Assembly: GCA_965637545.1 (NCBI GenBank)
Contig: OZ281496.1
Span: 27,156,001-27,220,000, forward strand
Length of the DNA: 64,000 nucleotides
DNA from: Phallusia mammillata
Lineage: Eukaryota
Direction of reading: 5' to 3'
Position 1 is the stretch's first letter; the number at the start of each line of letters is the position of its first letter. Made by a program: the position numbers and the translations under genes. Below, in pieces: positions 19,217 to 42,355 of this stretch. Under the pieces are notes generated by a model. That model made no database searches. It was given only the letters and a program-made list of their open reading frames with translations, and was not told the origin of the DNA.

Positions 19217-19348
19217 TAGGTTTTACATTGCTCAAAAACAAAGTGAAATACATTAACTGTCACTGAACAAGGAAGGTATGAATAGATTTTCGATTGCTCA
19301 AAAACACAGTAAAATACACTAACTGTCACCAAACAGGGAAAGTATGAA
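19217..19348 (-). repeat. 66-bp tandem duplication spanning the TMBIM stop codon
   Basis: Unit 19348-19283 (contains FILSLFGDS TAG) is repeated at 19282-19217 (FIPSLFSDS TAA). Confidence 0.85.
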
Positions 19349-22042: not shown

Positions 22043-23796
22043 AATGCCTGAACTGATCTCACTCACTTTTTACTAGGTTTCTCTGAACAAAACAAGCAAC
22101 ATGTCATGAACATTTATCAGTTAAACAAACTAATAAATATCTGCAGAACAAAACCGTTTCACGTTATTGTTGTCTTATGTAGATCTTAAGTAACGAAGGT
22201 TATCAGTTGTTGATTCAGTTAAATTTTTCAACGAAAAGCTGACTTTCACCAATCACGATTTAAAGATAAATGAGGAACTAAGTTAAGTTGTATTGTTGTC
22301 GGTTTTTCACCCTCCCGAAGTCACGAGAAAAAATAATTTTAACGAGTCAGGCATGACGATGACTCAAACTGAATAATCTCAAGAGCGGAACGGACTTTCA
22401 GTTCCTAAAATATAAACTTTTATGGCGTTTAATAATTGACCTAAAACCAACGGAAGGAAACATCAAATTACATCAAAATGGTTGAAAAACTAAAATTGAC
22501 GCAAAACAAAAGTCCAACAATTAATGTTTCTGTAATTGGGCGGAATTTCGCTACAGCGAATTAAAAATTGTAAACGTCTTCCGAAAGCATGATATTGGCG
22601 CAACTTGAATTGGTTTTATTGTTAATTTGTTGTACTTATTCCTCTTTAATTGTATTGCTATTTGAAGCAAAACAACCACAACAAAAGAATAAGATTGAAG
22701 GTATTGTACTTTTACGCAATTTAAAAATGTTTTGTTGAAACAGTAAAGTGATAAAACTACCATATTTGTTCGTTGTTTAAAGTTATTTGCATCTCCTTAA
22801 TGCAACACACCACTAAGCTTGTCGTCAGTTGTTAGATCTGCTTAAAAACGAAGTAGAGTAGTTTTTGCATATAGCAGTTAAAATGTTCCTGTTAAATGTC
22901 ATTAACACTACTCAACTCACTATAGTGTTAATATTAAGTGCTTGTTTTCTACCTTAGAAAAGTTGGATCAGCATTGTTGAATTTCATTCTCATTGAAAAT
23001 CAGAACTTTACGGTCAACAAAATGACCCAAGAGGTTGCAATGACTCTGACATGCACATCACACTGCTAAGGAAATAGGCAAACATTCAATGGCATTACAA
23101 CAAGGACATAATCTTTTACCTATAGGTAAACTATAGTTCACCTTGTGTGATCAAAAAGTTGGTATGTACGTTTATTTGGTTTTACATTGATTTTAAGGAG
23201 TAAAGTTTTTACCTATCGATGTTGATGTTTGCATACAAAACTGAAGCTTTCAGTAAACTTGAATCAGTCCGAGATTTTGTTTACTGAAATCTTTTGTATG
23301 ATTACCTGCAACTAAAACCATATGTATTGATTACACATGATTTGGGCTGATTTTGGTTCTAGCACAGTTTTGTCTAATGTTTGAGTTTTTGTTGGTTCAC
23401 TGAGTTGTAACAAGTTTATTGTTATGCCTTGGTTCAGGCAATATCACAAACTTGGTGAAGCTATATGCATTTAACTTGAGGTTAAAACTATTTGGCATCA
23501 GCAAAATTAGCTCTTTGCCACAAATTATGAATACATCCTCATTGGCAAGCATATTGCCATACTTGCAGAGACTCTGGAACATCAAATATATTGTTTCATT
23601 TTCCTTTCTTAGCATGAACTTAATAAAGATATCAATAATATGATGCAAAACAACAACAACAAGTAAAACATTTAGTGGCCTTGTTATATCTGTATTTTTT
23701 TTGTTTACTTATTTTAAACTACCAATATATAAAAGATTCAAAGTTTTGACATAAGCGTAAAATCAACATGTTTCTAATATAAACTATACACAAAAG

Positions 23797-26267
23797 TTAG
23801 GATTTTCTGAAGTATGCTATGTTGATATCGCCAGTCAAGTTGTGCAGATCAGCTTGTAGATACTTGAAGTCATCCTACAAAAAATTTGAAATAACAATCC
23901 AAACAAATAACTATAAAACAAGATGTAAAAGGCTTGTAATTTCTTTTTGCAAGTTACCAGTGAGGACCAGTATATAGTTTTAAAACAGTTTTCTTTACGT
24001 AACCATAAGATTGCAATTGATGCATTGTCAAAATATTTGAGAGAAATTTTTACCATGCCACTTTCAAAAATGATTCACATGCAAGGAGTAATTTTGTTTA
24101 TATTTTTTGCACCAGGACTCATTTAACCAGCTACAATACTGTTTTGGTGCTGCAGGTTGGCAGAATACTCTGTTTCTGTTGTGTGAAACAAATAATATTG
24201 AATGAACAATTTGAAACCATTCTTATGAGTTCATGTTTGGTCTTCAAATTTTCAAATCTTTCTTCAAGTGATGCTTTGTATTTGATTGTTGAACCTGAAT
24301 TTGTGTAGTCACTGTAGTTAAAAACAAAAATGCCACCTGGAACAAGCAGGTCAAACAGCATCTGTAACAAAATAGGCTGATTTTGTCGTAATGATGTTAC
24401 CAGTCTCTGGGTTTTATTTGCGGGAGGTGTATACTTGTTTTATAATTCACTGCCTGGTTTTGAAATTAGTATTTAATTGTTTCCTTAAATTGAATGTGAA
24501 TGTGGCATCAGCCTTTGTCAACGATGCTTTATTTTTGTTGTACATCATGAATTTATAGTTATCATTTAGCTGTAACAGTGCTTGGGGTGTAGAACCAGTT
24601 CTTCTTATAGTTAGTGCTTTATTACAATGTTGTTGTAATGTCCAAGCAGCGTGTTTATCGTTTATTTACTATTTGTGCCTTGGTTGCACAATTACCTCTG
24701 GCAAGGTGAACATTTTTTTGCAGTTGGTTTTAGCTAGTCCAATGATATCAACTACACCTGTTCAATTTCTGTCAATGATTTTCTTATTTAGAAATTACTT
24801 CGTACTGTGCCATTGCAACCAAACCCAGTCTTACCTCGATACATTCATGAGGAATATGTCCGAAACTAAGTCCTCCAAAACATATGATCAGATCATAGGA
24901 AGAGTTTTCTATGGGCAATGGTGACTGGAGAGAAATCATTTCCTGAAACAAAGTTCTGTAAAGAAAGGATAAACTGTCATTTTGTTTTAGATTAAATGGT
25001 TTGAAAACCTACAACTGGTTTTCCACTTTAAAAAAAGTTTTTCAAACTATTTTTGGGTCTATTTCTTATTTTGACAATTATTTTGTTGTGGACCTTTTAA
25101 ATGTTGAAGGTATATTGTAGCATATAACAGGGATTATCCTCCTAAAGGCGACATGAACAGGACAATGAATGTGAGATAACGTAATACATTTGACAGAAGA
25201 ACGGTATTTAGTTTAAGATGAACACAATTCATAACTGGGATCAGCCCTGAAGCATCTATGCAGACCAGTGATCACGGCACACTCATATATAAATCACAGT
25301 ATGTTTGGTGACCGGCTATTTCGGTATGAGGACTTCAATAGGCCCGGTGTAATGTAAATTATTTAGCTTATATATTATGCTGTATATAAAAAGAGAAATT
25401 GATTTCAACCCCAAGAAGTCTCCTAAAAGTTTGATGACAAATTCTGGCGGGTGACTTGGTAAATTCAATGACCACGTTTTCTGTACTGGATGTGCAAGAG
25501 TTACCAATAACTGATAAACTGTCTATTGTGTTCACCGGTAAACATTCTTGGTCTTAGCAGCTTCCAGCATTTCTTTGCAGGCATCCAGCCCGTCGATTGG
25601 TCCTAGCCAGCCGAAATTGCGCAACCCTGCACCACATCGACCCGCCGCTGAAATTTTGATAGTTAAGTATCAATCTGAGTCCAATCTTTGTTATGGATTG
25701 TTACTAAACGATTGGGTGTCAACTTGTGAAGACGTAGTTCAGCATAAAAGACTGACAGAAAAAACAAAGACGTATATATTTGTAACACCGTGTAGCAAGT
25801 GGTAGGATTCAACCGGTTCGCACCGGTTTTATAGAACTGTCTTACGAAATTTTATGAGATCAGCGAACCGGTTAGCATTACTGGTTAGCCTACTGTCAAT
25901 GACTTTTTGTAACAGAACTGGCTGAAAAATATGACTTTTGTGATATAACCGGCTGACAAAAAATTTCACTTCCACCACTGTGTGTAACCTAAATTGTTAA
26001 GTTATACAAACCGTTTTTAGTAGCTCAACATGAAACGAAATGTAACATACCACAGGCAACGTCTAAAGCTGTAAGCTCCTCTGTCTTCTTGTCTTTGTAA
26101 ATCTCCATAATAACGTCCATCATTTGGTTAACTAACAGGTTGACACTCGCTGTTTGACCTTCGTCGAGGTGTTTTGCTACTTTTGTGTACACTTCTTGAT
26201 TGTGTTTTGCTGAATCAGTCAGCTGACTCCACATTTGAGGAACAATTTTTTGTTTGTCTATGTTCAT
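23797..26267 (-). CDS. METTL27: METTL27/WBSCR27-like SAM methyltransferase, copy A. Exons 26267-26051, 25647-25536, 24955-24835, 24361-about 24218, 23874-23797
   Basis: LTALDVAC-AAGRCG, IDGLDACKEMLEAAKTKNVYR, SYDLIICFGGLSFGHIPHECIE, LLVPGGIFVF. Same intron phases as copies B and C. The last donor is weak and uncertain; the family name is from motif recall. Confidence 0.75.
25233..25320 (-). mobile_element. 3' tail fragment of the same SINE family
   Basis: AACTGGGATCAGCCCTGAAGCATCTATGCAGACCAGTGATCACGGCACACTCATATA aligns with 5561-5620 AACTGGAATCAGCTCTGAAGTGTTCATGCAGACCAACGATCACGGCGCACTTACATA. Confidence 0.65.
25797..25980. mobile_element. Older hAT-type MITE, 184 bp
   Basis: Ends AAGTGGTAGGA / TTCCACCACTG; imperfect TSD CGTGTAGC vs TGTGTAAC (6/8); internal AACCGG repeats. 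Confidence 0.6.
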
Positions 26268-26979
26268 GGTTGTTCAAGAAGAAGCCTATATTACTACATA
26301 GACTTTTGTGTCACTATGACTGCGGAAGTGTCTAATTACGCCGACAAAAACGCTGCAACAATTTGTGCAAACGGGCTAATAGGGTTTGGGCATTTAGTTT
26401 ACAATAGCTATAATAATTAACAAAAAAAAAAAAACACTAACAGTACAGTATAGTTCCACAACAAATCGCTTTGCCACATTGCAGCAAATCTATTACATCA
26501 CAAAAAGGTTGGTCTCTAAAAGGCAATGGAACTGAAATAAAGCGACATAACCCTCGACAAACTGTAGTGTCACTTGCATAATTGTTTCCTAAGCCATCAG
26601 GCTAACAGATTGACCTTAAATGATCTCTGAAAAATTTTAAAAAAAATTAACGTTTGAAATGCACATATTGCTTCGCCGTAGAGCACTCTATGTTCTGCAA
26701 TGTTCATAGTTTTCTATAGTAACAAATAAATAGATGGTCTTCAATGCAAAACTCGTATTTTCTACACCGAACTTTTTGGTTGTTTTCAAGATTCTACCAC
26801 ACATCCATATTTATTACCTTGGTCTAACCACTAAAATTCAATATGACCAAGGGCAAAAACCAATATTTGAAGCGGTTAAAGAAACTAACGTCAGATTTGC
26901 TTCACAAAAAGTGAAATTTGGAATAGGGACTTGGCATCCTTGTGTGTGGCGTTGTTTTGTGGGCGGAAAATTTATTTAA

Positions 26980-27886
26980 GGTACCTGAAGGTATATAGGC
27001 CCGGAAGGTAATAAGGCCCACTGCTAATATTTTTTTATGTGCCAGAAAAAATGCTTCCGTTTTGATGTTATTTTAAAATATATTTGTACTCAAAATGATT
27101 TACAAACTTTTGGACCTGAAAGTTATGTGTAATTGTTATCATGACCAATCCAAATAAAGAAGTGTTTATTTTTGACTTTTTATTATTTTTTGTTAAAATT
27201 GGTAACAAAAATGAAAAGATTGTGTTGTCGAAATGAAAACTTATTAGGATACATTAGTAATGGGGTCATTTTAGTTTAGAATACTTAAAATAAATTTTAT
27301 TACGGTTTTGTTTGTCAGCCATTGCTTGCAATAAGGCCCAATGATTTTTTGTCATTTTCTCAAATGTCTTTTATAGTAAAGGCGACTGATATGCGCAAAA
27401 TTTGCTTTTTTGCTTTCTTAGGGAGATAAAAAGTCTGAATAAGATGTTTGTGGAAGTAATCTTTCATTTAATATTTTTGGTTATCAAACGTCAAGGGGTC
27501 GTTTATTCTTTGTTTTAGTACTTTCAGATTAACAGTTATATGTCTTAGTTAACAGTATATATGTAATATGAGTTAATAACGTTGCTTGTTTGAACTTTTA
27601 TTTGACCGAAGCAAAGTATAAATGAGTTTGATTGGTTTCTAGACTATTTTTGAAAACATGAAAATGTTGGGCTTTATTAACAACATAGGTTTGTATTAAA
27701 GGCCCAAGTTTTAATTTTTTTTAAACTGTTATCCTACAAAAACAAAACTTGCAAACGTTTTCAAAATTTAATGGATGTTTAATATCAACCTCTGCAACAA
27801 TCATGCCGAGTTTGGCCTGGAACGGTTAAATGGTTTTTCAGTTATATGCAATAGTTTTTTAACGGGCCTTGTTAGCTGCCGGGACC
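26980..27886. mobile_element. Diverged non-autonomous DNA element between copies A and B (possibly Kolobok-like)
   Basis: Left TTAA|GGTACCTGAAGGTATATAGGCCCG; right end reverse-complemented GTAA|GGTCCCGGCAGCTAACAAGGCCCG. Internal AAGGCCCA repeats in both orientations; AT-rich interior. Confidence 0.35.
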
Positions 27887-27921
27887 TTACTAGATCCGCA
27901 ATCGACAATTTTATTCATAAG

Positions 27922-29903
27922 TTATGGCTTTCTGATGTATGCAATGTTGACGACTCCCATCATTTTCGTTAAATCAGCTCGTGGATAGTATGATTCGTCC
28001 TGCAAAACAAATCAACATTTACCAATCAACGTTTTGCTTTACTAATCAAATTTACAATTTTCCGACATATGACTTTTAGCAAAATTTCAAGTCCAACATT
28101 TCTTATGTGTTCGCTGGCCGTTGCTTTGACTATTTTGCCGCAAACACAGCAGCACGGTAAAAAGGCCATGACTTGCGTAAATACCAATCAAGATTTAAAA
28201 AATGTAACACTTTAACTGTTTTGATGATCTCGTATTCGGTTTTCAACTTTTCAATTTTTTCTTCTAGTGATTTCTTGTATTGCACTGTTGAACCCGGGTT
28301 TGTGTAATCACTGTAACTGAAAACTAGTATGCCGCCTGAGACAAGAAGACCCATCAGCATCTGTAACAACATATCGTGTTTTGTCTCAAACGTTATAATT
28401 TGGTCCCAACGGTAAAGTATGTGGTAGAAACAACAACCAATGCTTCTATGATTGGCGCAATGCAACTTGTTGTCTTTTCTATTATACAGTTTAGGTCTTT
28501 ATCAACAAAACCGGGTAGTTCTCCGCTGTGTTGACTATTCTTGCTGTAGAAATATGTAATGGGGAGACTTTTATTACCTCGAGGCAGTCGTGTGGAATAT
28601 GTCCAAAACTCAGCCCACCGAAGCACGTGATCAAATCATACGAGGATTTTTCTAAGGACAATGGCGTCTCAAGTGAAATCATTTCGTGATACTGAGTTCT
28701 GTCAAAGTAACAAAACATACATCATTGGTTGTTACAAATTCTAAATGGTTGGAATTTGTGTGGTTGTTAGTTGTTGCGTTATTGCTTTCTTACATGTGTT
28801 TCGGTTTATTCATTTCTATTGCCAAACCGCTTTGATATTGTGTTTATATTCGGTTGACGGATGTAACTTCTTACTACCAACCTGGACCAGACTTTTTGTT
28901 ATATATTTGTATTTAGATAAGGCCTTGAAATCGTTTGAACAGTGCTTGCTAATCTTGGAGTGCAGCTTATTTTATTATTGTCTTTCAATTGGTCAGGTAC
29001 TTCAATACATTTGGCCAGATACTAAAACTATTACGTCCACGAACGGTAAAATACTTCAAGACTAGTGCTAACCACATCTCTTGCGAGTGTATAAAACTTC
29101 GATATATAAATAATGCTGTATTTATCCCACCGGTAAACATTCTTGGTCTTGGCAACCTCCAACATTTCGTGGCATCCATCAAGTCCATCAATTGGTCCAA
29201 GCCAGCCTTCGTTTCGTAATGCAACAGCACATCGGCCTGTTCCTGAAAATTTGATTGTGTTAATCTCAATTCCACCAGCATTTGGTTGTGGTCGAACCAT
29301 GTTACAAAGATTTTGTAAATAAATAGAAGGGACACATAGTAAACTGTAAGTATTGCATGGTTGTCAAACCTTGCAAACATGGGAACACTATACACGGACT
29401 TGAAAAGTAATTTAATTATGGACATTACTGCCAAAGAACTGGTGTACAAGCCTGCACTGATGATGACGACAGAGATTGTTGAAACGTATGCATGATGTAT
29501 TCTTTATACACCAGTTATTTGGCAGTAAGTTCATGATTAAACTTGCAAACATGCTTTACCGAAAAGTTTGATTAGTTTCGAAATTCTTCGTAATCAACCT
29601 CTGTTGGAGTTTTGTCAAAACCGCATAGATCCAAGTTTTAGTATTAGCCTAGCCTCGATCACCTGCAGAAAAAAATGCATACTTACCGCAGGCAACGTCC
29701 AAAGCTGTTAGCTCCTCAGTTTCCTTGTCTTTGTATATCTCCATTATACCTTTCGTCATTTGATTAACTGACAAGTTAACACCTGCTTTTTGACCTTCGT
29801 CGAGATGTTTTGCTACTTTGCTGTACACTTCCCGATTGTGTTTTGCTGAATCAGTTAGCTGACTCAACATTTGGTTTATAATGTCTTGTTTATCGTTGTC
29901 CAT
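27922..29903 (-). CDS. METTL27: METTL27/WBSCR27-like SAM methyltransferase, copy B. Exons 29903-29687, 29242-29131, 28698-28578, 28360-about 28215, 27999-27922
   Basis: LTALDVACGTGRCA, IDGLDGCHEMLEVAKTKNVYR, SYDLITCFGGLSFGHIPHDCLE, LLVSGGILVF. Last exon DESYYPRADLTKMMGVVNIAYIRKP* is paralogous to copy A DDFKYLQADLHNLTGDINIAYFRKS*. Confidence 0.8.
29453..29492 (+). ncRNA. Minimal hammerhead ribozyme motif (Penelope-like type) inside a fold-back
   Basis: TGCA-CTGATGA-T-GACGA(CAGAGA)TTGTT-GAAA-CGT-A-TGCA: stem I 4 bp, canonical core, stem II 5 bp, palindromic ACGT stem III, GUA cleavage triplet. Flanked by 22-bp inverted repeats 29425-29446 / 29507-29528 (1 mismatch). Confidence 0.7.
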
Positions 29904-30798
29904 TATGTCCTCGTGTTACTGTTGACAAATGTTAACAAAAAAAAACAAAATTGACAAAATTAGTTTACACACATAATTTCTCAAAACTATCTCATGATGA
30001 CTACATCAGCAACAAAAGAGCTGTTTTAGAGACGATAAAACAAACAACAGCTTACACTAGCAGTTGCGGGCTAACGCCTTAAGGCATAAATTTTAACTCA
30101 GAAACATTTAGTTGAACCGGAGTGCAAGCCTGTAGCTTTAAATGCCGACCATTGTATTGGCTTGGAGCGCTTGTTGGCAAATATTTGCTTTTATGTGCAG
30201 ACAGAGTGGAACTATGTTCTTTCTAGAATGAATATTGACAGCATCAACCCGTTACATTGCAGCGAAAAGCTGTAAGGCTGACATATACATGCAAAAAGAG
30301 AAAAAAACTAAGTCAGTTATCAAAGCTTTTGCAGCAAATCGTTCATCAGGCGTTAAAAATGCAGCACAAATTCAAGTTTTTTAGCAGTTTTGGGAAAACT
30401 CGAATCACCTTTTTCGACGACTTGTATAGACTCGAATGTTAGCAATAAAAGTACTTGAATTGGGCTACTTGCATTAAAAGAAAGAAGCGGAGATGATGGG
30501 TTCTGTTTGGTGTTCTGATTTGACTAAGACTCGACTGATAATGATACCCTGTTTTTTGGCATAATGCAACTCAGGAAACGCTTTTGTCTGACCGCTGTTA
30601 AGCTTCAATTTACACCTGTAAACGTTTTCAAACTAAAGAATTCACGCATGTTACGATCATGATTAATAAAATGAGCATTTATTGCTGAACTTGTTTTTAA
30701 GCAACACAAAAATCCTCAAACGTGAAGTATTGAACTTTTTGGACTTGAAACATTGAAAACATCTGGTTATGTTTATCCGGAATATGAAACTTGGTTTG

Positions 30799-32839
30799 CT
30801 ATGCGTCCTTTTGATAGCACAAAATCTGCTCGTATTCAATACCATGCGAATAGCGTGTGTCATCTTTGACCACGTCGACTCGAACCTGTGAAAAATACAA
30901 AGTTTTTAAATTTCCAAGTCAGGAAATCTAAGGCCGATGAAAAACAAAATAGTTTTTTGATTCAATGTTGTGCGTTACCAATCTCTAGGTAAGAGCATGA
31001 ATCACTGCGCGACATGTGGCAAATTGTTGCCTGATCAGACCTGTATCATCTATTTGAAGTGAGAAACCAGTGTTTGAAGTCGAGTAATTCCAAATTTTTT
31101 TCCTGATGGCCTTTGATCCATTACTTAAATTGTTGTGTTAATTTCACTGCACAAGAGTACTGGCTTTAATTTGAGCAAAGACCTTCAAGTTGTATTACCT
31201 CCTTCACCAGGGTACACTTTCCAAGCAGTTGCTTCATAGTCTTTTCAACAGATTCCTGATATTTGACGTCCGATCCTGGATTTTTGTAGCTACTTACATT
31301 GATAGCCAACAAACCACCGGGTACCAGAATGTCCAGGAGCATCTAAATCATAAACGGAATAAAAATCAGAACATGGCCACGTTGTAAGTGGGTCCGAACT
31401 TTTGCAATGCCAATAAAACAAGGGTATTTCGCTTTGCCTTTGCAACAAGGTATGATGCATTTCTGCAGCTTACCCACACCGATATCTGCCTGTGCGAATG
31501 GAAATTGGACTAAAAACATACTTATTTTTTTTTTAACTTTTGAAGTTTTGCTGTTGGTTGTTTAATCTAAAGTGTCACGTTGAACAAGTTTGAAGTTTGC
31601 TTTTGTGAAATCATTGATGGCAAACCAACCTCAAGACATTGATATGGTAGATGACCAAAACTTAGACCACCTGTACACGTCACCAGATCGTAGCTCGAAT
31701 TTTGTATTGGTAGCGGTGACTCGGCAGAAATCAACTGATGATACAGCGTTCTGCACAACATAGATATTTACGGCACACGCTAATGCATCGTGTGTTTCAA
31801 CTCAAACTACTATTGTTTTTCCCCTCAATATTAACAAAAGGGTATCAGGTGCATCATATGAACACATTCATGCTATAATTACCGGTAAATTCCTTTTGTT
31901 TGAGCAACTTCGAGCATTTCTTTGCACCCGTCTACTCCATCAATCACTCCCAACCATTCAACTTTCCGGAGCGCTTCGCCGCAAAGGCCTGTTCCTGAAC
32001 ATGAGAAAGAACGCTTTACACTTTGTTTGCTTTTTTTAACAAATGCCGTTCCTTGTTAAACAAGATGAAGAAATTGTTGAAATAAGGATGTTTTGGTTTA
32101 GAAAATGGTGGGTTATCGGATTAAACATCTGTATGCAAGTTTATTTTTATGTTCTTTGAATCATGTTCAGTGTTATATTAAAAGCTCAGCTGATGAATAT
32201 TTCTAAACATTGCTTGTGGATCTTTTCCCTGGTACAGCGATTTTTAAATTGTAACAGGTGCCACAAAATATTTCTAGCGACTCTAGACCAACTTTTATCT
32301 CAAGTTTCAACGATTGATGAAAAATGCGCGCGTGTATGCCAAAGCCAGAGCGTCATTTCCTTTCTTATATTATCCACCCATCACAAGGCAGTGGCAACAT
32401 ATGTTTCTTTAACCATCTTTTGTGTTTGTGCTTGCAAAGAATGCTGAGACAATTAACCGTTAAGGTTTAAAATTCACAAATATACATCTAATTCTTTTCA
32501 TCAACGCAACATTGCAACGTTGTTTTTAAGGTTTAAACTTCACTCTTGATGTAAACATCAAGTATTTTTTATCAGTAACATATTGCAGTTACCTTGCAAA
32601 ATAACTGTTACAGTTCCATTACCTGAGCACACGTCTAAGGTGTAGAGATCCTTGGAGTTTCGTCCACTAGCAGAAAAGTACTCTGAAACGGTGTTTGCAA
32701 GAGTAGTCGGAGCCAATAATGACAACGATTTGTAGCTTTTGTCGTAATTGCGCGCAATCTTTCGGTACAAGATCTGGTTTTCTTGAGTTGATTCCGTCAG
32801 AGATTCGAACAAAATATCTATGACTGGGTTCTTGGCCAT
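30799..32839 (-). CDS. METTL27: METTL27/WBSCR27-like SAM methyltransferase, copy C. Exons 32839-32623, 31994-31883, 31750-31630, 31342-31199, 30885-30799
   Basis: LYTLDVCSGTGLCGEALRKVEWLGVIDGVDGCKEMLEVAQTKGIYR, SYDLVTCTGGLSFGHLPYQCLE, LLDILVPGGLLAI; canonical splice sites throughout. Confidence 0.82.
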
Positions 32840-35103
32840 TGTTAACTTTCCCGTTTTGCTGCAGAAACTAAAACAAAACTCGTTAGAAAATGGTTTGTCA
32901 GTGTTCTTCATGGTTTCACAAAACTTAAATATCAAAAGTCACAACTAACGACCAAATCGAACTTAATTTTTTTCTTATCTGTCTTGCAGCTAAACCTAAT
33001 TTGAATACTAATAAGCGTAGCCTATATTTGCATACAAAGCAACATAAGCGTATGCTAAACTTTTAAAAGCAGAGATATTTGGGAATTACAACAGGTAACT
33101 TGGATTTTTATAAACCCGCCCATCTCACTGTGTGTAACTGAATCAAAACACTTCGCAACTTCAAGTGTTTTGCCCGCCCTTTTGTGTCTGTGTTTGTTCG
33201 TATGTAGTAATGGATTGTTGCGCGTGCATTTGTCTTCCTTCCGGGGCTGGAAACCACCCTGCAGAACAATTAAGTGTAACAGAAGAGCATTGTATTTCCA
33301 AATGTTGTTTTAGAGATACTTTACATAATGAATCCGTTTTCTATATTTTCATTGAATAAATTGGAAAATCGCTTTGATATTTGTGTTCATCCTCCAGTTC
33401 GTACAAGGGACTGTCGCTCTGATTGTGCCGAAAAATGAAGGCTCCTTATCGACCTCCAAGCGCAAAATGAGCCGTGAGGAGCATCGTGTGTTGTAGCGAT
33501 TCGGGGAAAGGAAGGAGCAATGCTGTTGCTGCAATGCTCTGTAGAGGAGAAGTGGTATCCTTTGTTCGCCGTTTAGTTTAAAGGTTGTTTACGCCGTTTA
33601 GTTTAAATTTGTCTGATATACGGAAAAGAGATGCAACAAATCTACAACGAACGGTTCCATTTCATCGAATAGATCGAATAATTATCTTAAAAATTCTCAC
33701 TATAATCATTTACAGATCAACTTTCTTTTTCTTCCAGTACCCTCTTCTCCCCTTAAGGCTCTGTTTGTGGTATGTTTCTCTGTTCAATTCTAATTTGTTT
33801 TTTTCCCAATCCCAATGCAGTTTAGTGGGGAAACGACACAATTGTACCAGAACAAGGGTTAAGCCAAAAACAGTTGCGCAATACGTTATGAATGACAGAA
33901 TTAATAGCTGTCAGATGGGTAGTGTTGCATTGCCAGTTGGTCAGGAACTGTCGGCCACTGGTGAATGATAGCAAGGCGCTTTGGATAACAGGCACTTTTG
34001 ACCATTTGGAATAGGCTCAAAACCTGCGAGATTTGACCCGGCTCGATAAGACTCGTTACCTTAAAACTTGACTTGTACGGCTCCATTAACTTGACGTGAT
34101 TCCTAAATCGGATATTGGGTTGTTTGGCAGGTTTATTGATCGACGGGCCAGAGCGTGTCACCCTTTAGATCACAACTTTACAGAAAATTTTGAATTAGGA
34201 CTGCTAGGCAATTCGTTTCTTTTCTTCCAAAAGTCGGAGCGCGTATTGAAAAGTCACCTTCCAATTGTAACTCGCTTTTGTGGGTCGACACATTCACTGC
34301 TTTTGTTGTTTGGCGCTCCTGGGCGGTTCAATCTGATTTGATATCAGTTTCATGTTGTCAAAAAGTAACAGAACTTTCGCGTATTAAGTATCGGATATGC
34401 TTGTGTTGGGAATTCGTGCTGCTGTGGCGAAATAGCAGGAAAGTTATAGGACAATATGTCCACGAATTATGTGTTTTTTACACAAAAGAGATGAAATGTC
34501 CGTGATTTCGTATATGGTCACTTTCGTATGGAGGTTTCTTCCAATGAAGCGTTGAATTTAGCACCCAAGTTTTGAGCAACGAGTTAATGGCCGAATTGAA
34601 CTAGGCCTACATCGTTTAGTTTAGATTTTATGCGAGGCATAGATTTTCTTTTGTGCTTAAACTTTGCGAGCAGAACAGAATGGAAAACATTGACCATTGA
34701 CAACAGAATCTGACAGTAAAAAAACATAAGCTAAACATTCGGCGGTAACATGTCGTAGTTTCGTAGAATGTAATCAACTCTCTTATTACGGGATATTAAA
34801 TGTGCACTATATGCCAGCATCACTCGTCGCCTTGGTAATACATAGATCTGAAAGCCTTAAAACTCCCACGAAGCGGTGATACTAAACTAACACAGTATCG
34901 GCGATCGTGTTTACACAATCATTATCCTTAGCGTTTGCAGCCTTTTGTTGCTGTGTTGTGTATGTTTGAGGCGGAGAAAGAAACGCCGGTAGTATAGGCC
35001 TTTGCCTCTGTACGTTGCACTGATACACTGATAAAGATATTGACGTTTGCTTGCTGTGAACATGGATTAGATTTGCTGGTGTTTCCGAAGAAGCATTTTC
35101 AGT

Positions 35104-36612
35104 ATGTGCCGCTGGGGATGTGTGTATAACGATACGGTAAGTTTTGTTTTATAGTCTGTCCGTCTTTAGTGTTACTGAGTTTGAACGTCAAAAGTAAATT
35201 TGCGTCATTTAGGTATTTGAACAAGGCCATGATTTCCCCCCTACTGAGAAGTTTGTGTGAAATCAAGAGTTAATGAAACGGAAACCTTGTCAAATTCGTT
35301 CCACTAAGTTTACATGCAAATAGGTCTATGCATGTTATAGCTACAAAACACTGCAAATGTGGATGTCTTATAGCTATATACAAACACTATGCTGCGACTA
35401 TTTCTGATAGAACTGATACTTTACTGGTATCAATAGTGCTTGGTTGAATTAAAGAATATACAAAAGATACTTACAATGAACAGAACGATGCTGAGTTTGA
35501 GTACTTGAAAATATACGATCCAGTTGATTATTAAGATATAGAATAGCCTACCCACGCTGTAGTTTTTGAGCTAACGGTTAAAACTCGCTAAAAACGACCA
35601 CTAAGCGTACACAATTAAATATTTTAATTAAAACATGAACATAACTTCCTGCTATAAAAGCAGCAAATTAAATTTATTTAATGGTTAGGCTACAGACATT
35701 TCCTGTTAAGTCATACCTCGCATTCATTTGTGGTTCATTGTTAGCCTATTAGCCTACCCGCGTTTTTTTGCCTTACGGTAGACAACTTAACGAACCTTAA
35801 TTGATTTGAACTGTTGATAAAATAATATTTAACTTAAAATTCTCTAATACTAAACCAAACCCGGCCCGAAAAGATGCGTCAAAACCGATTGATTGAAATT
35901 TGCTTTGTAAAACATGCTTTTGACCGTTTTCAGACCTATATGTGTCGGTTCTGTGGTACCCGTTTCTGCAACGATTGTTTGAAGGGGGAATTTGTTGGTT
36001 TGATGGTCGAAACAGCTCATTGCAAAAGATGTAACCAGGTGGGTATGAGAAACTGACCTAATCACAGGCCTGCATCAGTCGGCTTCTTTTCTGCCTATGT
36101 TCCATCTCTGCTCTCGGCAATACTTTATCACATATTTTCTTGGTAAAAATTATACAAATTGTAGCCTCAATTTGTTAAGAAAATTGTTATCGACTTGATG
36201 AAACTTTGCGAAAAAGAATCTTACGAACATTGTGTGTTTTAAATGTATGGAATGTCCAAGTGTTCCTACGTTATCTTTTCGACTTGATCTGGTATTGCAT
36301 TGATAACGAAATTATGTATTTAGAAAGACTTCTGGTCGTGAGGACATTGGCTGTTACCTTAAAACCAGATGCTTGAAAAACAGTGTAAAATATCTCAGTC
36401 TTAAAGGGATGTCCGCATGTATGTTTCAGATACAATGTCTCGGCAAACGAGTGGAGTTCGTGCCAGGAAAGGGGCCTTCCGCTGAGATGAAGGAAAAATA
36501 TGCCGCCTGGAAAGAGAAACAAGGAAAAAAGAAAGGCGGTAAAAAGAAGGGAGGGAAGAAAGGGAAAAAGAAGGGCAAAAAGGGAGGAAAAAAGAAGAAA
36601 AAGAAACGTTAA
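35104..36612 (+). CDS. Unassigned 106-aa protein with a Cys-rich N-terminal half and a Gly/Lys-rich tail. Exons 35104-35136, 35934-36038, 36430-36612
   Basis: An in-frame TAG lies upstream of the ATG. Two phase-0 GT-AG introns give MCRWGCVYNDTTYMCRFCGTRFCNDCLKGEFVGLMVETAHCKRCNQIQCLGKRVEFVPGKGPSAEMKEKYAAWKEKQGKKKGGKKKGGKKGKKKGKKGGKKKKKKR*. Confidence 0.75.
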
Positions 36613-37604
36613 AGAGGATATGTTACTTCCTGCTCAATTCAAAACATATTTTGTCACGTGCAATTGTTTTTATTCCATTTTAATTGAGTCAACCAAGCAA
36701 TTGTGTCCCAGAAAACCACAAAACTTCATGATGGATATAGTTTTTCTGGTGCTGTTTTTTGGAACTATGCTTTCAGTTCGTATTGAAAACGAAGCTGCCT
36801 TCTGAGTTCGACTGTACAATCAAATTTCAAAAAGTTTTTCCACACGTTGCAGATTGCTTTTTGCTTCTGCAAAGAAACCGACGGATCTAGTAGCTCTTGA
36901 TAAGTTCGATTGTAAACCACACTCCTATGTTTTAAGTGGTTAATTGATAGAAGCTACTGCTAGACTGTTGCACACCAGTGATATTGTGTATCATTGCGTA
37001 TTGTTGTGGTTGCGTATAGTTCCCTTTTTTATGTCATTTATTTTTGCGCTTAGAGATTTAACACTGTGAACATTTATTACTGTATTAGATAATTACTTCA
37101 GATTTAAATAAAGTCAAATCTACAACCAGTTGCTGGACAAGTCTTAACACTTCAAAGTCTCTACTCTTCTTACGATTCAGGCACATTTGACACACAATGA
37201 TATCTATTAATGATTTATATCATTTGGCGAGTGGGATTGTTGGAAAATCGCGTAAACACGGCAAAAACTGGTACAGATACTTTTGGCAGGGTTTGCAAAA
37301 AAGAGACCTAGTGGTAACGCATAACAGTTTCAAATTCTACTCATGGTTAGCTGGTTAGCAGTAAACCAGATATCCAAGTTATAAAAAGGAATTCAAGACC
37401 ACTGTTTCAATGCGCTTAATGCATTACGAGGGGTTATAAGCGATTCAAGTATAAACCAGTTCAAGAAACAAGCTTTAACCAAAGTAAAAGCTTGTCAAGA
37501 CTTGATTGCGAATCGCCACACGCAACGCTAAAAACCATACAGGATTCCTGATTGGCACCTCTCTTGGCGCTTGACATCCACTTGACATTAAAAAATCCAA
37601 CTTT

Positions 37605-40600
37605 TCAATCCCAGAGCTTAATCTGACCGTCCCAGCCACATGTTATAAGCTTAGAGGTCTCATGCGGGTGCCAGGTGCAGCCGATGCATACGCTGTCGTG
37701 TGCCTTGAACTTGCTGTACATTTTCGTAGTCTTCCAATCCCATATACACACTTTGCCATCGCCGTCACCCGATGCCACGTAGGACATGTCAGGGGAGAAT
37801 GTCAGCTGACAGGCGTAACCTGCCACCTGTCGATTAGACATGTTTAAACGTTAAACTAGAATTCGGATCATAATTTGGTTTTTACATTCATGTGTAGGTT
37901 TTAATTATCAGTTGTAAAAGTTAGATGTGTCGAAACGTACCGTGCTGTACTAGTATGTGGGGGTTTTTAAAAAACGGTTGCAGTGCGTACTTCCAATTGG
38001 TGATACAATTTGGGACTTTCATAGTTAGCTCGAAGGGTGCTGCATAAAGCTCTGGTTTGGTATTATCAACCAAATAAGGCTTTCTAAATTCAAATTTCTT
38101 ATTATTATACATCTGTGCACCATACTGAAGTTCAGAGAGACAGACAAGCGTTTGTTTTGCCATTGAATACAAGTTTAACTTACCATGTGTCCTTTAAACA
38201 CTTTCTTTCTCTTCTGGCGGAATCTGCCTTGCACGTCAAATATGACAATCTTGTTGTCAAGCGACTGACATCCAAGCCATTTCTCATTGGGTGCCAGTGT
38301 GCAGGCTGGCATAGAATGCATTCCAGGGTCAGCAATGTACTTGAAATCAACAGGGATGTCCCTATTTTGGAAAAATGTAAACGTTTACCATCTACGTTTG
38401 GCAAGCTTATAACACTGATTTGTTTGTTTTTGTTACGTAATAATCTTTTTGTAGTTTAAATTGTGTAAATTTAGTTACATAAGGCTGTTTCCCCAATTTG
38501 TGTCAAAAGCTTTCACGGAAATGTTATTTTTGTATACAGTTAAACAAAGCAAGTTTTCTTACCACTCCCAGACGCGAAGACTTTTATCGTCTGAAGTAGA
38601 CACGAACTTGGTGTTGTTGTCAACGAAAGTGATTGTGTTTACCGCCCCCAAGTGACGATCGTACTCTTGTACCGCGTCACCGGAATTTATATCCCACTAC
38701 AAGTGAAAAATATATATAGTTAAACGGACAAAACGTACAGGTACAAAATACCTATGTTGTTACAAGGTTAATTATAGAACCTTCCCTTTCGACTGGCCAT
38801 CAACCTTCCTAGTGCAGAATTTGACAAATGAGAATTCTTTCCTTAGCTCGGGTGATTTTTGTTTTTGGGCCCCTTTTTCTGGACCCACCACGTACGCCAT
38901 TTGGTGACAAATTTACTTTTTTCTAAACGTTAATCACGCCTTGTAATACGGTGTTTAGCATTTACCTTAAACCACCAAATGCATTAAGCTTTTGAACTGG
39001 GTAACGTTGAAGTTTTGGTTGTTCAATGCTGTTGTGTGGTTATGAGTCCAGCTATATAGGCTCAAGTCGAAAGATATATTGAAGTCGTTGTTTGGTTCTT
39101 ACCGTTACAATCTTTTTGTCAGAAAGACCGGCAACGAATAGATGCTGTTTGTTTTGGTCTGGGTTGAATTTCACGCAGTAAGGTATCTTTCCGTTAGAAA
39201 ATCTCTTGATACATTTGCCTGTGAAAAGTTACAGTATGTTATATTTTTAAAGTGTCCTGTAGATTCATACGCAAATTGAAAACAAGCCTCAAAATACAAG
39301 CTTCAATTGTAGAGCTCGCAGGAATGCGCAAGTGTTTGAAATGTGGGGAAGTACCTGTTTCTGTGTCCCAGAGTTTTATGAATCGGTCGTAAGCAGCCGT
39401 GAGAAATCTGCTTCCATCATTATTAAATGCAGCTTCACGAACAGCCTTTCCATGTCCCGTAAACGTACGTAGCAAACGTCGTTTGTTGTAAACTTCCCAT
39501 AACTGTGGAGTACATATAATTAAGGTTTATCTTGCCAAAGATTGAAATAGAAAAATACACGTTCAAACAATAAATGATATTAAAGTTTATTCTAAGAGAG
39601 AATGCATGCTTCGAATGCAAAACAGATAATTTGCAGATCAAAATAGTAATAAATTTGGTTTTGTTTGGTCAGAAAATGATCTTACCTTGACTTTACAGTC
39701 CATAGATGTGGATAATAGTAAATGCCCAGACCTTGGAAAAAGTTTAATAGAGGACACAGATTTTGTATGACCAGTCCAGGTGTGGAGAAGCTTTTTGGGA
39801 AGGTAGCATTTCGCAGGAGGCATGTCTGATTTCAGATTAACACCAACATCTTGTGGGATATGCAGATAGGATCGACCCTGGTGGATAAATGAGTTCAGTT
39901 TTTACAGCTTTCAGAGCTTATGAAAGTAACAGGATTACAGTCCCAATTGTTGGGAAGATGTTAAATTAAATAATCCATAAATTAAATGTTGTGGGATAGA
40001 CAGGTACAAATAGATATTCAGATGATTTATGAGTATTTTTTTCTCTGGTTTAGACTTCTGGTTCTAGTAGAATTGTTTACATGATTTTGCCAGAAAGTAA
40101 ACTCAAATCAACTGATCTCAATGACTACACAGTGTACAAGTCTACAGATTACTTAAAAAGTGTCTTAACATGTGGTGGAATTAACTACCTGATAATCAAG
40201 AGGGTCCTTGACATGTAATGTAGTTTTCTCTTCAACTGGTTTTTCTTCAGGTTTCTTTCCTCTCTTCTTCCTCTTTGATGTGAGTTCATCAAGTTCTTTT
40301 TGCATTTCCTTAACAAACACAACATTGAAAACCAATGTTTATCAGATTATCATCAATTTATGTATTTAACTATAACCATAGGCGTCGATTTTTTAGCATG
40401 AAGTTTCTTTTGTGGGGTGGCAAAATTTTGAAGTAATTCCTCATGTGATCAAACCACACTACGTTAAATGTTAAGGTTTGTAGATGCCATTTCGTGGATA
40501 TTGACAGCGTATAACGTGTATTACTCTGTATGCATTCTTGCTTAACTTGGACGTAACAACTGTGAAAGTCACATCACAAACCGTCCATCTAGTTGTGTAG

Positions 40601-42355
40601 TTATCATGTCACAATGCGTTAGTGATGTGTTATTGATGCTCAAAATGGGTTTTCCCCATGCGTTGTCTAAAAACAGTAAAGATTTTGCGTTGCTTGCTTT
40701 GCACATGCTCGAAATATAGCGACCGCTAGAAAGATCGCATGTGAATGAAAGAAACGGATATATGTAAGGCACAAGTATAAATGCGGTTAGGCAATTTCTG
40801 GGGTGGCAGCATAGTTATTTTATAATGGCTGCCACCCCAGATATTTTTACTGGGGAGGCATGCCACCCCGGGAATCGACGCCTATGACTATAACATACAT
40901 GTTGTAACTTACCTCTGATGGTTTAGCAATTTTTACTTCATCTACATATCCACCCCACGGACCACAAAAGCCTTCAATGTCCTCGGGATCATTTTGTCTC
41001 ACTCTTTTTCGTTTATCTTGTGGCCTTGCCTTAATTTTCTCAAATACAGTCTTGGTGTCACTTGGCATGACAACCTCTAATTCTTGCTTCTTTTTGCCCT
41101 TTTTTTCTTCCTTTTCTTTTATTTCCCCCTCTTCAGTTGTGTCCTCATTTTCTTTTTTGTCTTTTTCTTCTTCATCATCAGAATCATCAAAGTTTGTCAT
41201 ATTAACTGCAAAAGTTAATTAAAAGAGTCAATTGCTTTGGCATAAACATTTTTTTTCGCCTAACAATTTGCCTGGAGTTGCATAAGGGGTGGTTTGCAAC
41301 TTGTTTTAGGCAATGGACCACTAGCCCCAATAAAAAAACTCATGGACCACTTTATTGTTGAGAAAAAATACAGTCAATTTTAATTTTGAACCTACTAATC
41401 TTGTCCTTTGGGTCACCTCAACTTGGCAAATGTTATCAAGAGGTCATGGCACCAGAAAGGGTGGGAACCACTGTGTTAAATTATCTGATAGAGTTTGAAA
41501 ACTAACATCAATGATCAAACACTTACCAACAAGTTTTTCTATCGGATCTGCTGTATCTACTGATGGATCGATTGCAAATCCTAAAAAACAAGAAACAAAG
41601 ATGGTTGATTCCATGAAAACAAAACATTATAAAACTCACCATAGCTATGAAATGTTCTTCTCTGGTTTTCAAAGTTAAAGGCACTAAAATGTGCTTCTTC
41701 CACATAACCGGCTAAAGTATTTTTCTGAGCCAGTTGTTGCCTTGTTTTAAATGGGTTTGCTGGCCCCTAAAAATGAATCGAAGTTAAAGACCCAATTCAT
41801 TCAGGTTCCAAACATTAATGATTAGATACATAAATGAAATGTATTCTTTTGATAGTCAGTTATGTACGAACCTGTTCCGGGGCATGCATCTCTTCATAAG
41901 TAGGATTGTAAGTGACCACTTTGTTGTTTATGTGATCAACAACACTGGGACCTCTTGTGTCTCTCTGTAAACGTAACAAGGTGCATAGAGTTCAACAAAA
42001 TTGTCAAAATAAGAGTAATGATAATTTAGATGTAACACATTGCTTAACTACCAGCAGTGTAGAAGCTTGGCATTCTGGTTTTACATTCTTTCAACGCTAT
42101 GTCAACTGACAATCTTATTGTGATGTACAATTCAGAAAAGGAAATATAGTTTTAATATTATAGCTTTCTTACCGTAGAAATGACTTCAGGTGCTGCAGCA
42201 ACGACAGCCAGAGAAATCGGTTTACTTGTTGGTAACGGTTTCAGGTGTAGCATTTCTTCTTCGTTAACCGTTTTCTCGTCGGTATCTGACGAGCCTGGCG
42301 ATTCCCCATCCGAAATATCCGCATAAGCATTTTTTAACGAAGCAATAGCTTCCAT
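37605..42355 (-). CDS. CDC40: Pre-mRNA splicing factor CDC40/PRP17 (WD40), multi-exon
   Basis: [13 protein letters not shown]..., [134 protein letters not shown]. Confidence 0.96.
40377..40886. mobile_element. hAT-type MITE, 510 bp, in CDC40 intron
   Basis: Perfect 14-bp TIRs CATAGGCGTCGATT / AATCGACGCCTATG; perfect 8-bp TSD ACTATAAC; subterminal GGGGTGGCA repeats. Confidence 0.92.

What the first reader, a model, noticed from the sequence alone, without database searches (positions are those of the whole stretch)
35104..36612. Unassigned small gene: 9-Cys putative zinc-binding module plus a histone-like Lys/Gly tail
Seen: a clean three-exon, 106-aa ORF. Cys spacing is C2-x3-C6, C15-x2-C18, C23-x2-C26, H40-C41-x2-C44, C49, and the last 33 residues contain 21 Lys in GKKK/GGKK repeats. 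I cannot assign a family. Inference: a double zinc finger with a basic nucleic-acid- or microtubule-binding tail; it could be a sperm or ciliary protein. This is the best candidate for an undescribed protein in the window.
Basis: partly seen in the sequence, partly recalled or inferred. Interest (0 to 1): 0.7.

Follow-up and report, generated by a model that had tools for sequence, protein, structure and literature searches.

The report
Unnamed conserved two-zinc protein, TPPP-linked
This is a real, spliced, single-copy gene for a 106-residue protein that belongs to an undescribed family found in many invertebrates and flagellated protists. Its cysteine-rich head is fused in protists to the tubulin-binding p25-alpha (TPPP) domain, which points to a role at microtubules or cilia.

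Summary
The three exons (35104-35136, 35934-36038, 36430-36612, + strand) translate as described, have GT..AG introns, and both junctions occur in assembled transcripts. Full-length orthologues with the same exon boundaries exist in Ciona, Clavelina and Styela, next to the same CDC40-like neighbour.

The family also occurs in echinoderms, molluscs, annelids, nemerteans, bryozoans, rotifers, flatworms, cnidarians, Trichoplax, volvocine algae and Hexamita. Every named member is called 'uncharacterized'. No Pfam family, solved structure or paper matches it.

Eight cysteines in four pairs are conserved across the whole family, which fits two zinc sites. H40 is not conserved, and C49 is kept only in animals. 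The Lys-rich tail is an animal feature.

New evidence: in environmental protist sequences, 10 of 17 long ORFs that begin with this module carry a p25-alpha/TPPP domain above Pfam's cut-off, and an eleventh sits just under it. A sperm-only role is unlikely.

No vertebrate, arthropod or nematode member was named among the hits.

Caveat: in three of four runs, exon 2 is joined to a distal non-coding exon ending at 23125 instead of exon 1. That form cannot encode the first Cys pair.

The function is inferred, not shown.

The parts
35060..35103 (+). Minimal 5' UTR of the exon-1 transcript form
   Evidence: The contig of run X5 starts at 35060 and runs into exon 1 (table 8).
35104..35136 (+). Coding exon 1, residues 1-11, carrying the first Cys pair (C2, C6) and W4
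   Evidence: Translation. Identical to residues 1-11 of the Ciona, Clavelina and Styela orthologues. M1, C2, W4 and C6 are invariant in 19 animal sequences and kept in at least 90% of the wider family.
35137..35933 (+). Intron 1 (797 nt, GT..AG, phase 0)
   Evidence: Skipped in the X5 contig. Splice sites read. Ciona has an intron at the same position.
35934..36038 (+). Coding exon 2, residues 12-46, carrying Cys pairs C15/C18, C23/C26 and C41/C44
   Evidence: Translation. It is the only match to the family profile in the 240-Mb genome (E 1.6e-15). 29 of 35 residues are identical to Ciona and Clavelina.
36039..36429 (+). Intron 2 (391 nt, GT..AG, phase 0)
   Evidence: Skipped in contigs of X1, X2, X5 and X7, which come from 3 studies. 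Ciona has an intron at the same position.
36430..36612 (+). Coding exon 3, residues 47-106 plus TAA. It holds C49, the G51/R53/E55 strand, a short predicted helix and the tail
   Evidence: Translation. Conserved columns. Helix 64-77 appears in the low-confidence full-length model of the Clavelina orthologue.
36511..36609 (+). Polybasic Lys/Gly tail, residues 74-106 (21 K, 9 G, 1 R)
   Evidence: Counted. Basic K/S/G-rich tails ending in a K run are present in all animal orthologues but differ in sequence. They are absent from the Chlamydomonas and Hexamita members.
36613..36978 (+). 3' UTR as far as contigs show it. The next AATAAA is at 37107
   Evidence: Contigs reach 36763 (X1) and 36798 (X2), with a separate piece at 36821-36978 (X1). 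The poly(A)-like signal comes.
22873..23125 (+). Alternative distal 5' exon or exons, spliced to exon 2 across 12.8 kb. The 3' end at 23125 is exact. The 5' limit is inferred from 253 unplaced letters, assuming they are contiguous
   Evidence: Loose ends of the X1, X2 and X7 contigs before exon 2 match window 23100-23123 uniquely. A GT donor sits at 23126, and the last in-frame codon is TAG.

Best explanation
Shown: this is a real, transcribed, single-copy, three-exon gene. It encodes a 106-residue protein of an old eukaryotic family that has no name, no Pfam model and no literature. Inferred from conservation and a confident model: the first ~50 residues, which always start at Met1-Cys2, form a small all-beta module that binds two zinc ions through four Cys pairs (C2/C6, C15/C18, C23/C26, C41/C44). 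The central C-x2-C-G-x-x-[FY]-C-x2-C resembles FYVE and AN1 fingers, so a cross-braced arrangement is plausible but not established. Inferred from domain fusion: in many protists the same module is the N-terminal domain of TPPP-like proteins (p25-alpha domain), which bind and bundle microtubules and track with cilia. The free-standing animal protein therefore most likely acts at microtubules or axonemes. In this reading the zinc module is the conserved docking or regulatory part. The animal-specific polybasic tail takes the place of p25-alpha as the element that holds on to the acidic tubulin surface. The partner, the location and the effect on microtubules are not shown.
For: Gene reality: exon translations, GT..AG introns and spliced contigs in 4 runs from 3 studies. 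Orthologues with identical exon boundaries, and a CDC40-like WD40 gene next door in Ciona, Styela and Clavelina. Single copy in the genome.
Family: 19 named animal orthologues. Only 53 clusters among 1.84 billion representatives reach E<=1e-3. The taxa are named.
Homology of the animal and protist groups: hhalign probability 98.9%, E 1.2e-17.
Zinc module: C15, C18, C23, C26, C41 and C44 are invariant, and C2 and C6 are kept in at least 90% of 40 sequences. AF2 gives pLDDT 84 with four strands. The weak structural neighbours are all zinc ribbons or rubredoxin-like knuckles.
TPPP link: P0068, P0069 and P0071 carry PF05517 (E 1.8e-8, 3.2e-10 and 4.2e-27). Of 17 long environmental ORFs that start with the module, 10 carry p25-alpha above the cut-off and one sits just under it, in several architectures (+WW, +NUDIX, repeated partial domains) and at GC 0.31-0.67. 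P0069 is an uninterrupted ORF on genomic contigs from three samples.
p25-alpha proteins stabilise microtubules and co-occur with flagella (PMC3498115, PMC10057920, PMC9698843). The window's genome has at least two p25-alpha loci elsewhere.
Against: There is no direct evidence of zinc binding, location or partner. Fusion evidence is indirect and comes from the protist branch, where the module is only about 35-40% identical to the animal one. The family was not named from vertebrates, arthropods or nematodes, so it is not a core ciliary component. 6 of the 17 long protist ORFs have no p25-alpha hit at all, one of which has an EF-hand. The X-box (RFX) test is weak: one-mismatch sites occur in 5 of 10 orthologue promoters against about 2 expected, and there is no exact site. 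The module-p25-alpha complex prediction gave no verdict. In 3 of 4 runs the assembled transcript uses a distal exon and cannot encode C2/C6.
Confidence: 0.45

Rival explanations
1. A small nucleic-acid-binding protein, acting on chromatin, in the nucleolus, on the ribosome or on RNA. The zinc-ribbon-like head would contact RNA or DNA, and the Lys-rich tail would act like a histone H1 or ribosomal-protein tail, or as a nuclear localisation signal.
For: The tail has 21 K in 33 residues. Other phyla have S/A/K-rich tails reminiscent of H1 C-terminal domains. The weak structural neighbours include ribosomal zinc-ribbon proteins, Rpb12, TFIIE and MCM zinc modules (Z 2.1-2.9).
Against: The tail is missing from the algal and Hexamita members and is not conserved in sequence. 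All the structural scores are at noise level. In protists the module's dominant fusion partner is a tubulin-binding domain, not a nucleic-acid-binding one. The patchy distribution argues against a core ribosomal or chromatin role.
Confidence: 0.22
2. A protein-protein adaptor or RING-like ubiquitin-ligase module unrelated to microtubules, whose fusion to p25-alpha in protists is lineage-specific domain shuffling.
For: Cross-brace-type Cys spacing. Weak RING and U-box neighbours (Z 2.0-2.4). 6 of the 17 long protist ORFs lack any p25-alpha hit, and WW, NUDIX or EF-hand domains also occur.
Against: No RING, B-box or IBR model reaches significance in more than 1 of 40 members. There is no His ligand. 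p25-alpha is by far the commonest partner and recurs in different architectures and GC classes.
Confidence: 0.15
3. A FYVE-type membrane reader. The head would bind phosphoinositide and the polybasic tail would bind acidic lipids, tethering the protein to endosomal or ciliary membrane.
For: The best Pfam match is FYVE, at 23.2 and 19.3 bits for the Ciona and Clavelina proteins. UniRef automatically names two flatworm members 'FYVE-type domain-containing protein'. Polybasic tails bind acidic membranes (general knowledge).
Against: The match is below the 27.8-bit cut-off. Only 1 of 40 members matches FYVE at E<=0.01. The PI3P-binding R(R/K)HHCR and WxxD motifs are absent. No FYVE structure reaches Z>=2.
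Confidence: 0.08
4. Not a functional protein-coding gene, meaning a chance ORF or a non-coding transcript.
For: In three of four runs, exon 2 is joined to a distal non-coding exon that brings an in-frame TAG.
Against: There is 58-87% identity over the first 60 residues across ten animal phyla. Intron positions are conserved. A spliced contig contains exon 1. Synteny is conserved.
Confidence: 0.02

Closest known systems
FYVE zinc finger (Pfam PF01363)
   Same: Eight Cys in four pairs. The central C-x2-C-G-x-x-[FY]-C-x2-C is followed about 14 residues later by C-x2-C. FYVE is the best, though sub-threshold, Pfam match.
   Different: It lacks the R(R/K)HHCR, WxxD and RVC signatures. The first pair is C-x3-C (up to x5 in some members) and sits at the very N-terminus. 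Scores are below the cut-off, only 1 of 40 members matches, and no FYVE fold appears in the structure searches.
AN1-type zinc finger (Pfam PF01428)
   Same: The spacing of the first six ligands is similar: C-x2/3-C, then 8-12 residues, then C-x2-C-x4-C-x2-[C/H]. There are weak matches (E 0.28-0.77).
   Different: The last ligands here are C-x2-C after 14 residues, not H-x5-H-x-C. The module has no His ligands. Scores are far below the cut-off.
TPPP-like proteins (p25-alpha domain, PF05517), multidomain forms
   Same: In protists the module is the N-terminal domain of proteins with full or partial p25-alpha domains. Published catalogues list multidomain TPPP-like proteins with zinc (B-box), WW and EF-hand partners (PMC3498115).
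   Different: The window's protein has no p25-alpha domain and carries a polybasic tail instead. The TPPP papers read here do not describe this module. Whether their 'Znf BBOX' is the same domain was not tested.
Zinc-ribbon / rubredoxin-like knuckle modules (adenylate kinase lid, LapB, eL40, Rpb12)
   Same: These are the nearest shapes to the predicted model: short beta hairpins carrying CxxC knuckles.
   Different: The scores are at noise level (Foldseek E>=0.41, Z<=3.2, TM<=0.55). Those modules bind one metal, whereas this one has ligands for two.
Histone H1 / sperm nuclear basic protein C-terminal tails
   Same: Lys-rich, low-complexity, predicted disordered tail.
   Different: The resemblance is in composition only. 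There is no globular H1 domain, the tail sequence is not conserved between phyla, and asexual rotifers and algae keep the gene.

Membership tests
FYVE zinc finger (PF01363) | Profile score at or above Pfam's gathering cut-off (27.8 bits) | tested here: not met
   Exon 2 scores 16.3 bits. The Ciona and Clavelina orthologues score 23.2 and 19.3 bits. Only 1 of 40 family members matches at E<=0.01.
FYVE zinc finger (PF01363) | Eight zinc-ligand Cys in four pairs | tested here: met
   C2/C6, C15/C18, C23/C26 and C41/C44 are invariant or kept in at least 90% of members. The first pair is spaced x3, not x2.
FYVE zinc finger (PF01363) | Basic R(R/K)HHCR motif at the third Cys, and an N-terminal WxxD motif (phosphoinositide pocket) | tested here: not met
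   The residues before C15 are T-T-Y-M. W4 lies inside the first Cys pair and no conserved D follows it.
FYVE zinc finger (PF01363) | FYVE fold | tested here: inconclusive
   The model has pLDDT 84. No FYVE chain reaches Z>=2 among 48,161 representatives, but small zinc domains score poorly in such searches.
AN1-type zinc finger (PF01428) | C6H2 ligand set ending in H-x5-H-x-C, and a profile score >=27.9 bits | tested here: not met
   Scores are 10.5-11.8 bits. There is no conserved His, since H40 varies.
RING / B-box / IBR fingers | Profile match and a His-containing ligand pattern | tested here: not met
   E-values are 1.8 to 5. One of 40 members matches B-box at E 1e-4. RING and U-box structures reach only Z 2.0-2.4.
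TPPP-like proteins (p25-alpha, PF05517) | Presence of a full or partial p25-alpha domain | tested here: not met
   There is no p25-alpha match in the exons or the tunicate orthologues. The genome's p25-alpha loci lie on other contigs. Only the protist relatives carry the domain.
The unnamed 'MC-x-W' two-zinc module family (defined here) | Starts at Met1-Cys2, with W4, then C-x2-C-G-x-x-[FY]-C-x2-C ... G ... G-x-M ... C-x2-C | tested here: met
   All of these residues are present in exons 1 and 2. The profile matches the window at E 1.6e-15. The exons align colinearly to orthologues.
Motile-cilium genes under RFX control | X-box near the promoter, conserved in orthologues | tested here: inconclusive
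   There is a one-mismatch site at 34826, 278 nt before the ATG. Such sites occur about once per 3 kb in the window. They are present in 5 of 10 orthologue promoters against about 2 expected, and none is exact. The transcription starts are unknown.

The most novel reading that the evidence does not exclude
The module is an ancient, dedicated partner domain of the TPPP/p25-alpha microtubule system. It would date from the last eukaryotic common ancestor or close to it, is fused to p25-alpha in many protists, stands alone in animals, and was lost in vertebrates and ecdysozoans. Every reliable member starts exactly at Met-Cys, mostly followed by Arg or Lys, as in RGS4/5/16. The first zinc ligand could therefore double as an oxygen- or NO-sensitive N-terminal Cys degron, tying the stability of a ciliary microtubule factor to redox or metal state. 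The alternative distal promoter, which forces a start at the bilaterian-invariant Met14, would then yield a degron-less form lacking the first knuckle.
Probability: 0.1. Interest if true: 0.85.

Novelty: new variant of a known kind. Interest (0 to 1): 0.55.

Why it matters
Small cysteine-rich proteins are routinely left as 'uncharacterized'. This one turns out to define a compact zinc module conserved from diplomonads and green algae to tunicates. It has no Pfam model, no structure and no literature.

Its repeated fusion to the p25-alpha domain gives a concrete, testable lead. TPPP proteins regulate microtubule bundling and cilia, and in humans are tied to synucleinopathies, yet their partners are poorly known. 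A conserved zinc module attached to them in protists and free-standing in invertebrates may reveal a missing regulatory component.

On the practical side, the 33-nt first exon is missed in many annotations. Numerous database entries start at Met14 and read into the second intron.

Tried and rejected
- Pfam scans of the exons, the orthologues and 40 family members found nothing above cut-off.
- A PDB search by sequence profile gave a best E of 0.0057, a C2H2 finger, which is spurious.
- The first AF2 run, on the full-length Clavelina orthologue with 19 sequences, was poor (pLDDT 55). The second, on the domain alone with 40 sequences, was good.
- Foldseek against PDB, VIA-align (wide search and second look) and the Atlas shape search found only weak zinc-ribbon neighbours.
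- The Atlas feature search scored at most 0.84, which is a lead only.
- Complex prediction of the module against the p25-alpha domain of the fusion protein in L011 returned no verdict. The score was 0.00, the alignments were not used, and the partner was poorly folded. This is not evidence either way.
- The X-box scan was not informative for the window alone and only marginal across 10 orthologues.
- Literature searches found nothing for gene identifiers of Chlamydomonas, Ciona, urchin, Styela, Trichoplax, Exaiptasia, Dimorphilus, Bugula, Brachionus, Gonium and Macrostomum, or for motif strings.
- Supplements of three Chlamydomonas cilia or co-expression papers either were not held or did not contain the gene.
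- Earlier notes of this scan hold nothing on this gene.
- Left out by rule: the three exons were never joined into one protein for any search or fold. The whole-protein steps used the orthologues P0001 and P0002 instead.

Full report
**1. The observation**

The region was read. Translating the three proposed exons by reference gives 11, 35 and 60 residues and a TAA stop. Both introns have canonical ends, GTAAGT...TTTCAG (797 nt) and GTGGGT...TTTCAG (391 nt).

The last 33 residues contain 21 Lys, 9 Gly and 1 Arg. Window composition (about 38% GC) and the short introns fit an invertebrate genome.

All whole-protein work used database orthologues.

**2. Transcription**

Contigs of four RNA-type runs from three studies were laid on 34400-37400.

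- Junction 36038/36430 is skipped with GT..AG in all four runs.
- Junction 35136/35934 is present in one run (X5). That contig covers 35060-35135, exon 2 and part of exon 3.
- In X1, X2 and X7, exon 2 is preceded by up to 253 letters that do not lie in the stretch. Their last 24 letters occur once in the window, at 23100-23123. They sit just before AG|GT at 23125/23126.

So there is a second transcript form, whose distal exon is spliced to exon 2 across 12.8 kb. Its last in-frame codon is TAG, so it can start only at Met14 and would lack C2 and C6. Contigs cannot rank isoforms, but this form was the one assembled in three of the four runs.

The 3' UTR reaches at least 36798, perhaps 36978. AATAAA lies at 37107.

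**3. Orthologues**

A word search with the open frame around exon 2 found Ciona intestinalis LOC101242297 (104 aa) and Clavelina lepadiformis LOC143465957 (106 aa). They begin with the same eleven residues as exon 1 and end in the same kind of tail, so the three-exon model is independently predicted in other ascidians. Each window exon aligns colinearly to residues 1-11, 12-46 and 47-104 of these proteins.

In the Ciona genome the introns fall after residues 11 and 46, as they do here.

A CDC40/PRP17-like WD40 gene lies tail-to-tail downstream in the window (ORFs, contigs), in Ciona and in Styela. In Clavelina it lies directly upstream.

The family profile finds one copy only in the 240-Mb genome.

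**4. The family**

A second word search gave 19 proteins, all called uncharacterized. They come from ascidians, sea urchins, bivalves, a chiton, an annelid, bryozoans, rotifers and Schistosoma.

A full HMMER search with the N-terminal profile found only 53 clusters at E<=1e-3 among 1.84 billion representatives. Cluster look-ups and a profile word search added more taxa:

- Animals: Macrostomum, cestodes, a monogenean, a nemertean, Brachionus, Exaiptasia, several corals, Lamellibrachia and Trichoplax.
- Volvocine algae: Chlamydomonas reinhardtii CHLRE_01g002900v5 (76 aa), Edaphochlamys, Gonium, Astrephomene and Tetrabaena.
- The diplomonad Hexamita inflata (53 aa, many copies).

No vertebrate, arthropod, nematode, fungus or land plant was among the names. 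The animal and protist groups are homologous (hhalign probability 98.9%, E 1.2e-17).

Many database entries start at Met14 and run on as '...CNQV...'. This means they miss the 33-nt first exon and read into intron 2. It also suggests that both intron positions are old, which is an inference.

**5. The module**

- In 19 animal sequences, 25 of the first 55 positions are invariant, including all nine Cys.
- Over 40 sequences including protists, C15, C18, C23, C26, G29, G33, C41 and C44 are invariant. C2, W4, C6, G19 and M35 are kept in at least 90%.
- H40 varies freely, and C49 is animal-specific.
- Every reliable member starts at Met-Cys.

AF2 on the domain with 40 sequences gives pLDDT 84 and four short strands.

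No Pfam family reaches its cut-off. FYVE is the best match at 23 bits against 27.8, followed by AN1, B-box, C1_4 and IBR at noise level. Across 40 members no family is shared.

No solved structure matches by sequence or by shape. Foldseek gives E>=0.41, VIA-align gives Z<=3.2, and the Atlas gives TM<=0.55. The neighbours are zinc ribbons, rubredoxin-like knuckles and a few RING or U-box domains.

The spacing C-x2-C-G-x-x-[FY]-C-x2-C-x14-C-x2-C is that of the FYVE core, and its first six ligands match AN1. However, the lipid-binding FYVE motifs and the AN1 histidines are absent.

I therefore file it as a new family of two-zinc module. Its ligand topology, cross-braced or sequential, is unresolved.

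**6. The tail**

All animal members end in a basic, low-complexity tail with a terminal Lys run. It is G/K-rich in tunicates and S/A/K-rich elsewhere. The algal and Hexamita proteins have none. The tail is thus a conserved property in animals rather than a conserved sequence.

**7. Clue to function**

The more distant hits P0068, P0069 and P0071 carry the module at the N-terminus and a p25-alpha (TPPP) domain behind it. P0069 is one uninterrupted ORF on genomic contigs from three samples.

A metagenome scan with the protist profile gave 22 loci. Seventeen hold long ORFs that start with the module. Of these:

- Ten have p25-alpha above the cut-off.
- One sits just under it.
- One has an EF-hand.
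- Five have no domain.

The architectures differ: full domain, repeated partial domains, +WW, +NUDIX. GC ranges from 0.31 to 0.67.

p25-alpha proteins bind and bundle microtubules, and their occurrence tracks the eukaryotic flagellum (PMC3498115, PMC10057920, PMC9698843). The TPPP papers I read list B-box, WW and EF-hand partners but do not describe this module.

All named species with the module are ciliated or flagellated. The window's genome has p25-alpha genes on other contigs.

By the Rosetta-stone argument, the free-standing animal protein most likely works at microtubules or cilia. The polybasic tail is a plausible replacement for p25-alpha as the tubulin-binding element. This is inference, not demonstration.

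Retention in asexual bdelloid rotifers, Trichoplax and algae argues against a sperm-only role.

**8. Tests that did not decide**

- One-mismatch X-box sites lie upstream of 5 of 10 orthologues against about 2 expected. None is exact, and the site in the window (34826) is unremarkable on its own.
- The complex prediction of module against p25-alpha returned no verdict.
- No paper or held supplement mentions any member.

**9. Verdict**

The ciliary or microtubule guess gains real but indirect support. The sperm and histone analogies do not.

The gene is already predicted in related species but is uncharacterized. The family as such, and its link to TPPP, appear undescribed in the libraries searched.

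Noticed in passing
window 22873-23125 (+), joined to 35934: An alternative distal 5' exon is spliced to exon 2 over 12.8 kb, spanning several minus-strand genes. It ends in an in-frame TAG and contains a short upstream ORF, so this form can start only at Met14. Met14 is invariant in all 19 animal sequences aligned (bilaterians), which may or may not be connected.
   Followed up: partly
window 37205-41200 (-): A CDC40/PRP17-like WD40 gene converges on the finding's 3' end. Its contigs start at 37205-37223, roughly 100-230 nt from the other gene's likely end. The adjacency is kept in Ciona, Styela and Clavelina (L002, L034, L033).
   Followed up: partly
window 24131-32935 (-): Three tandem copies of a methyltransferase-like gene. 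Recurrent ORFs share similar motifs at 24131-26267, 28130-29903 and 31166-32935. They lie inside the long intron of the distal-exon transcript.
   Followed up: no
window 19319-22066 (-): ORFs resembling a TMBIM/GRINA (Bax-inhibitor-like) protein with a Pro/Gln/Tyr-rich N-terminus. Its start faces the distal exon at about 22.9 kb, so the two may share a bidirectional promoter.
   Followed up: no
window 10679-10692: A perfect palindromic X-box-type (RFX) site, GTTACTATGGTAAC. It is the only exact match in the 64 kb. The gene it may serve was not examined.
   Followed up: no
L033 8281-8816 (Clavelina lepadiformis): A tandem paralogue (LOC143465958, 81 and 61 aa isoforms) lies directly downstream of the Clavelina orthologue. 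The window's genome has a single copy.
   Followed up: partly
database proteins P0029, P0031-P0033, P0036-P0041, P0043, P0045, P0046, P0048-P0051, P0054, P0056-P0058: Many predicted proteins of this family are mis-modelled. They lack the 33-nt first exon, start at or just before Met14, and read through the intron after '...CNQ'.
   Followed up: partly
L009 29-1210: An environmental protist ORF combines the zinc module, a p25-alpha domain and a NUDIX hydrolase domain in one 394-aa protein. This architecture is not listed in the TPPP papers read here.
   Followed up: no
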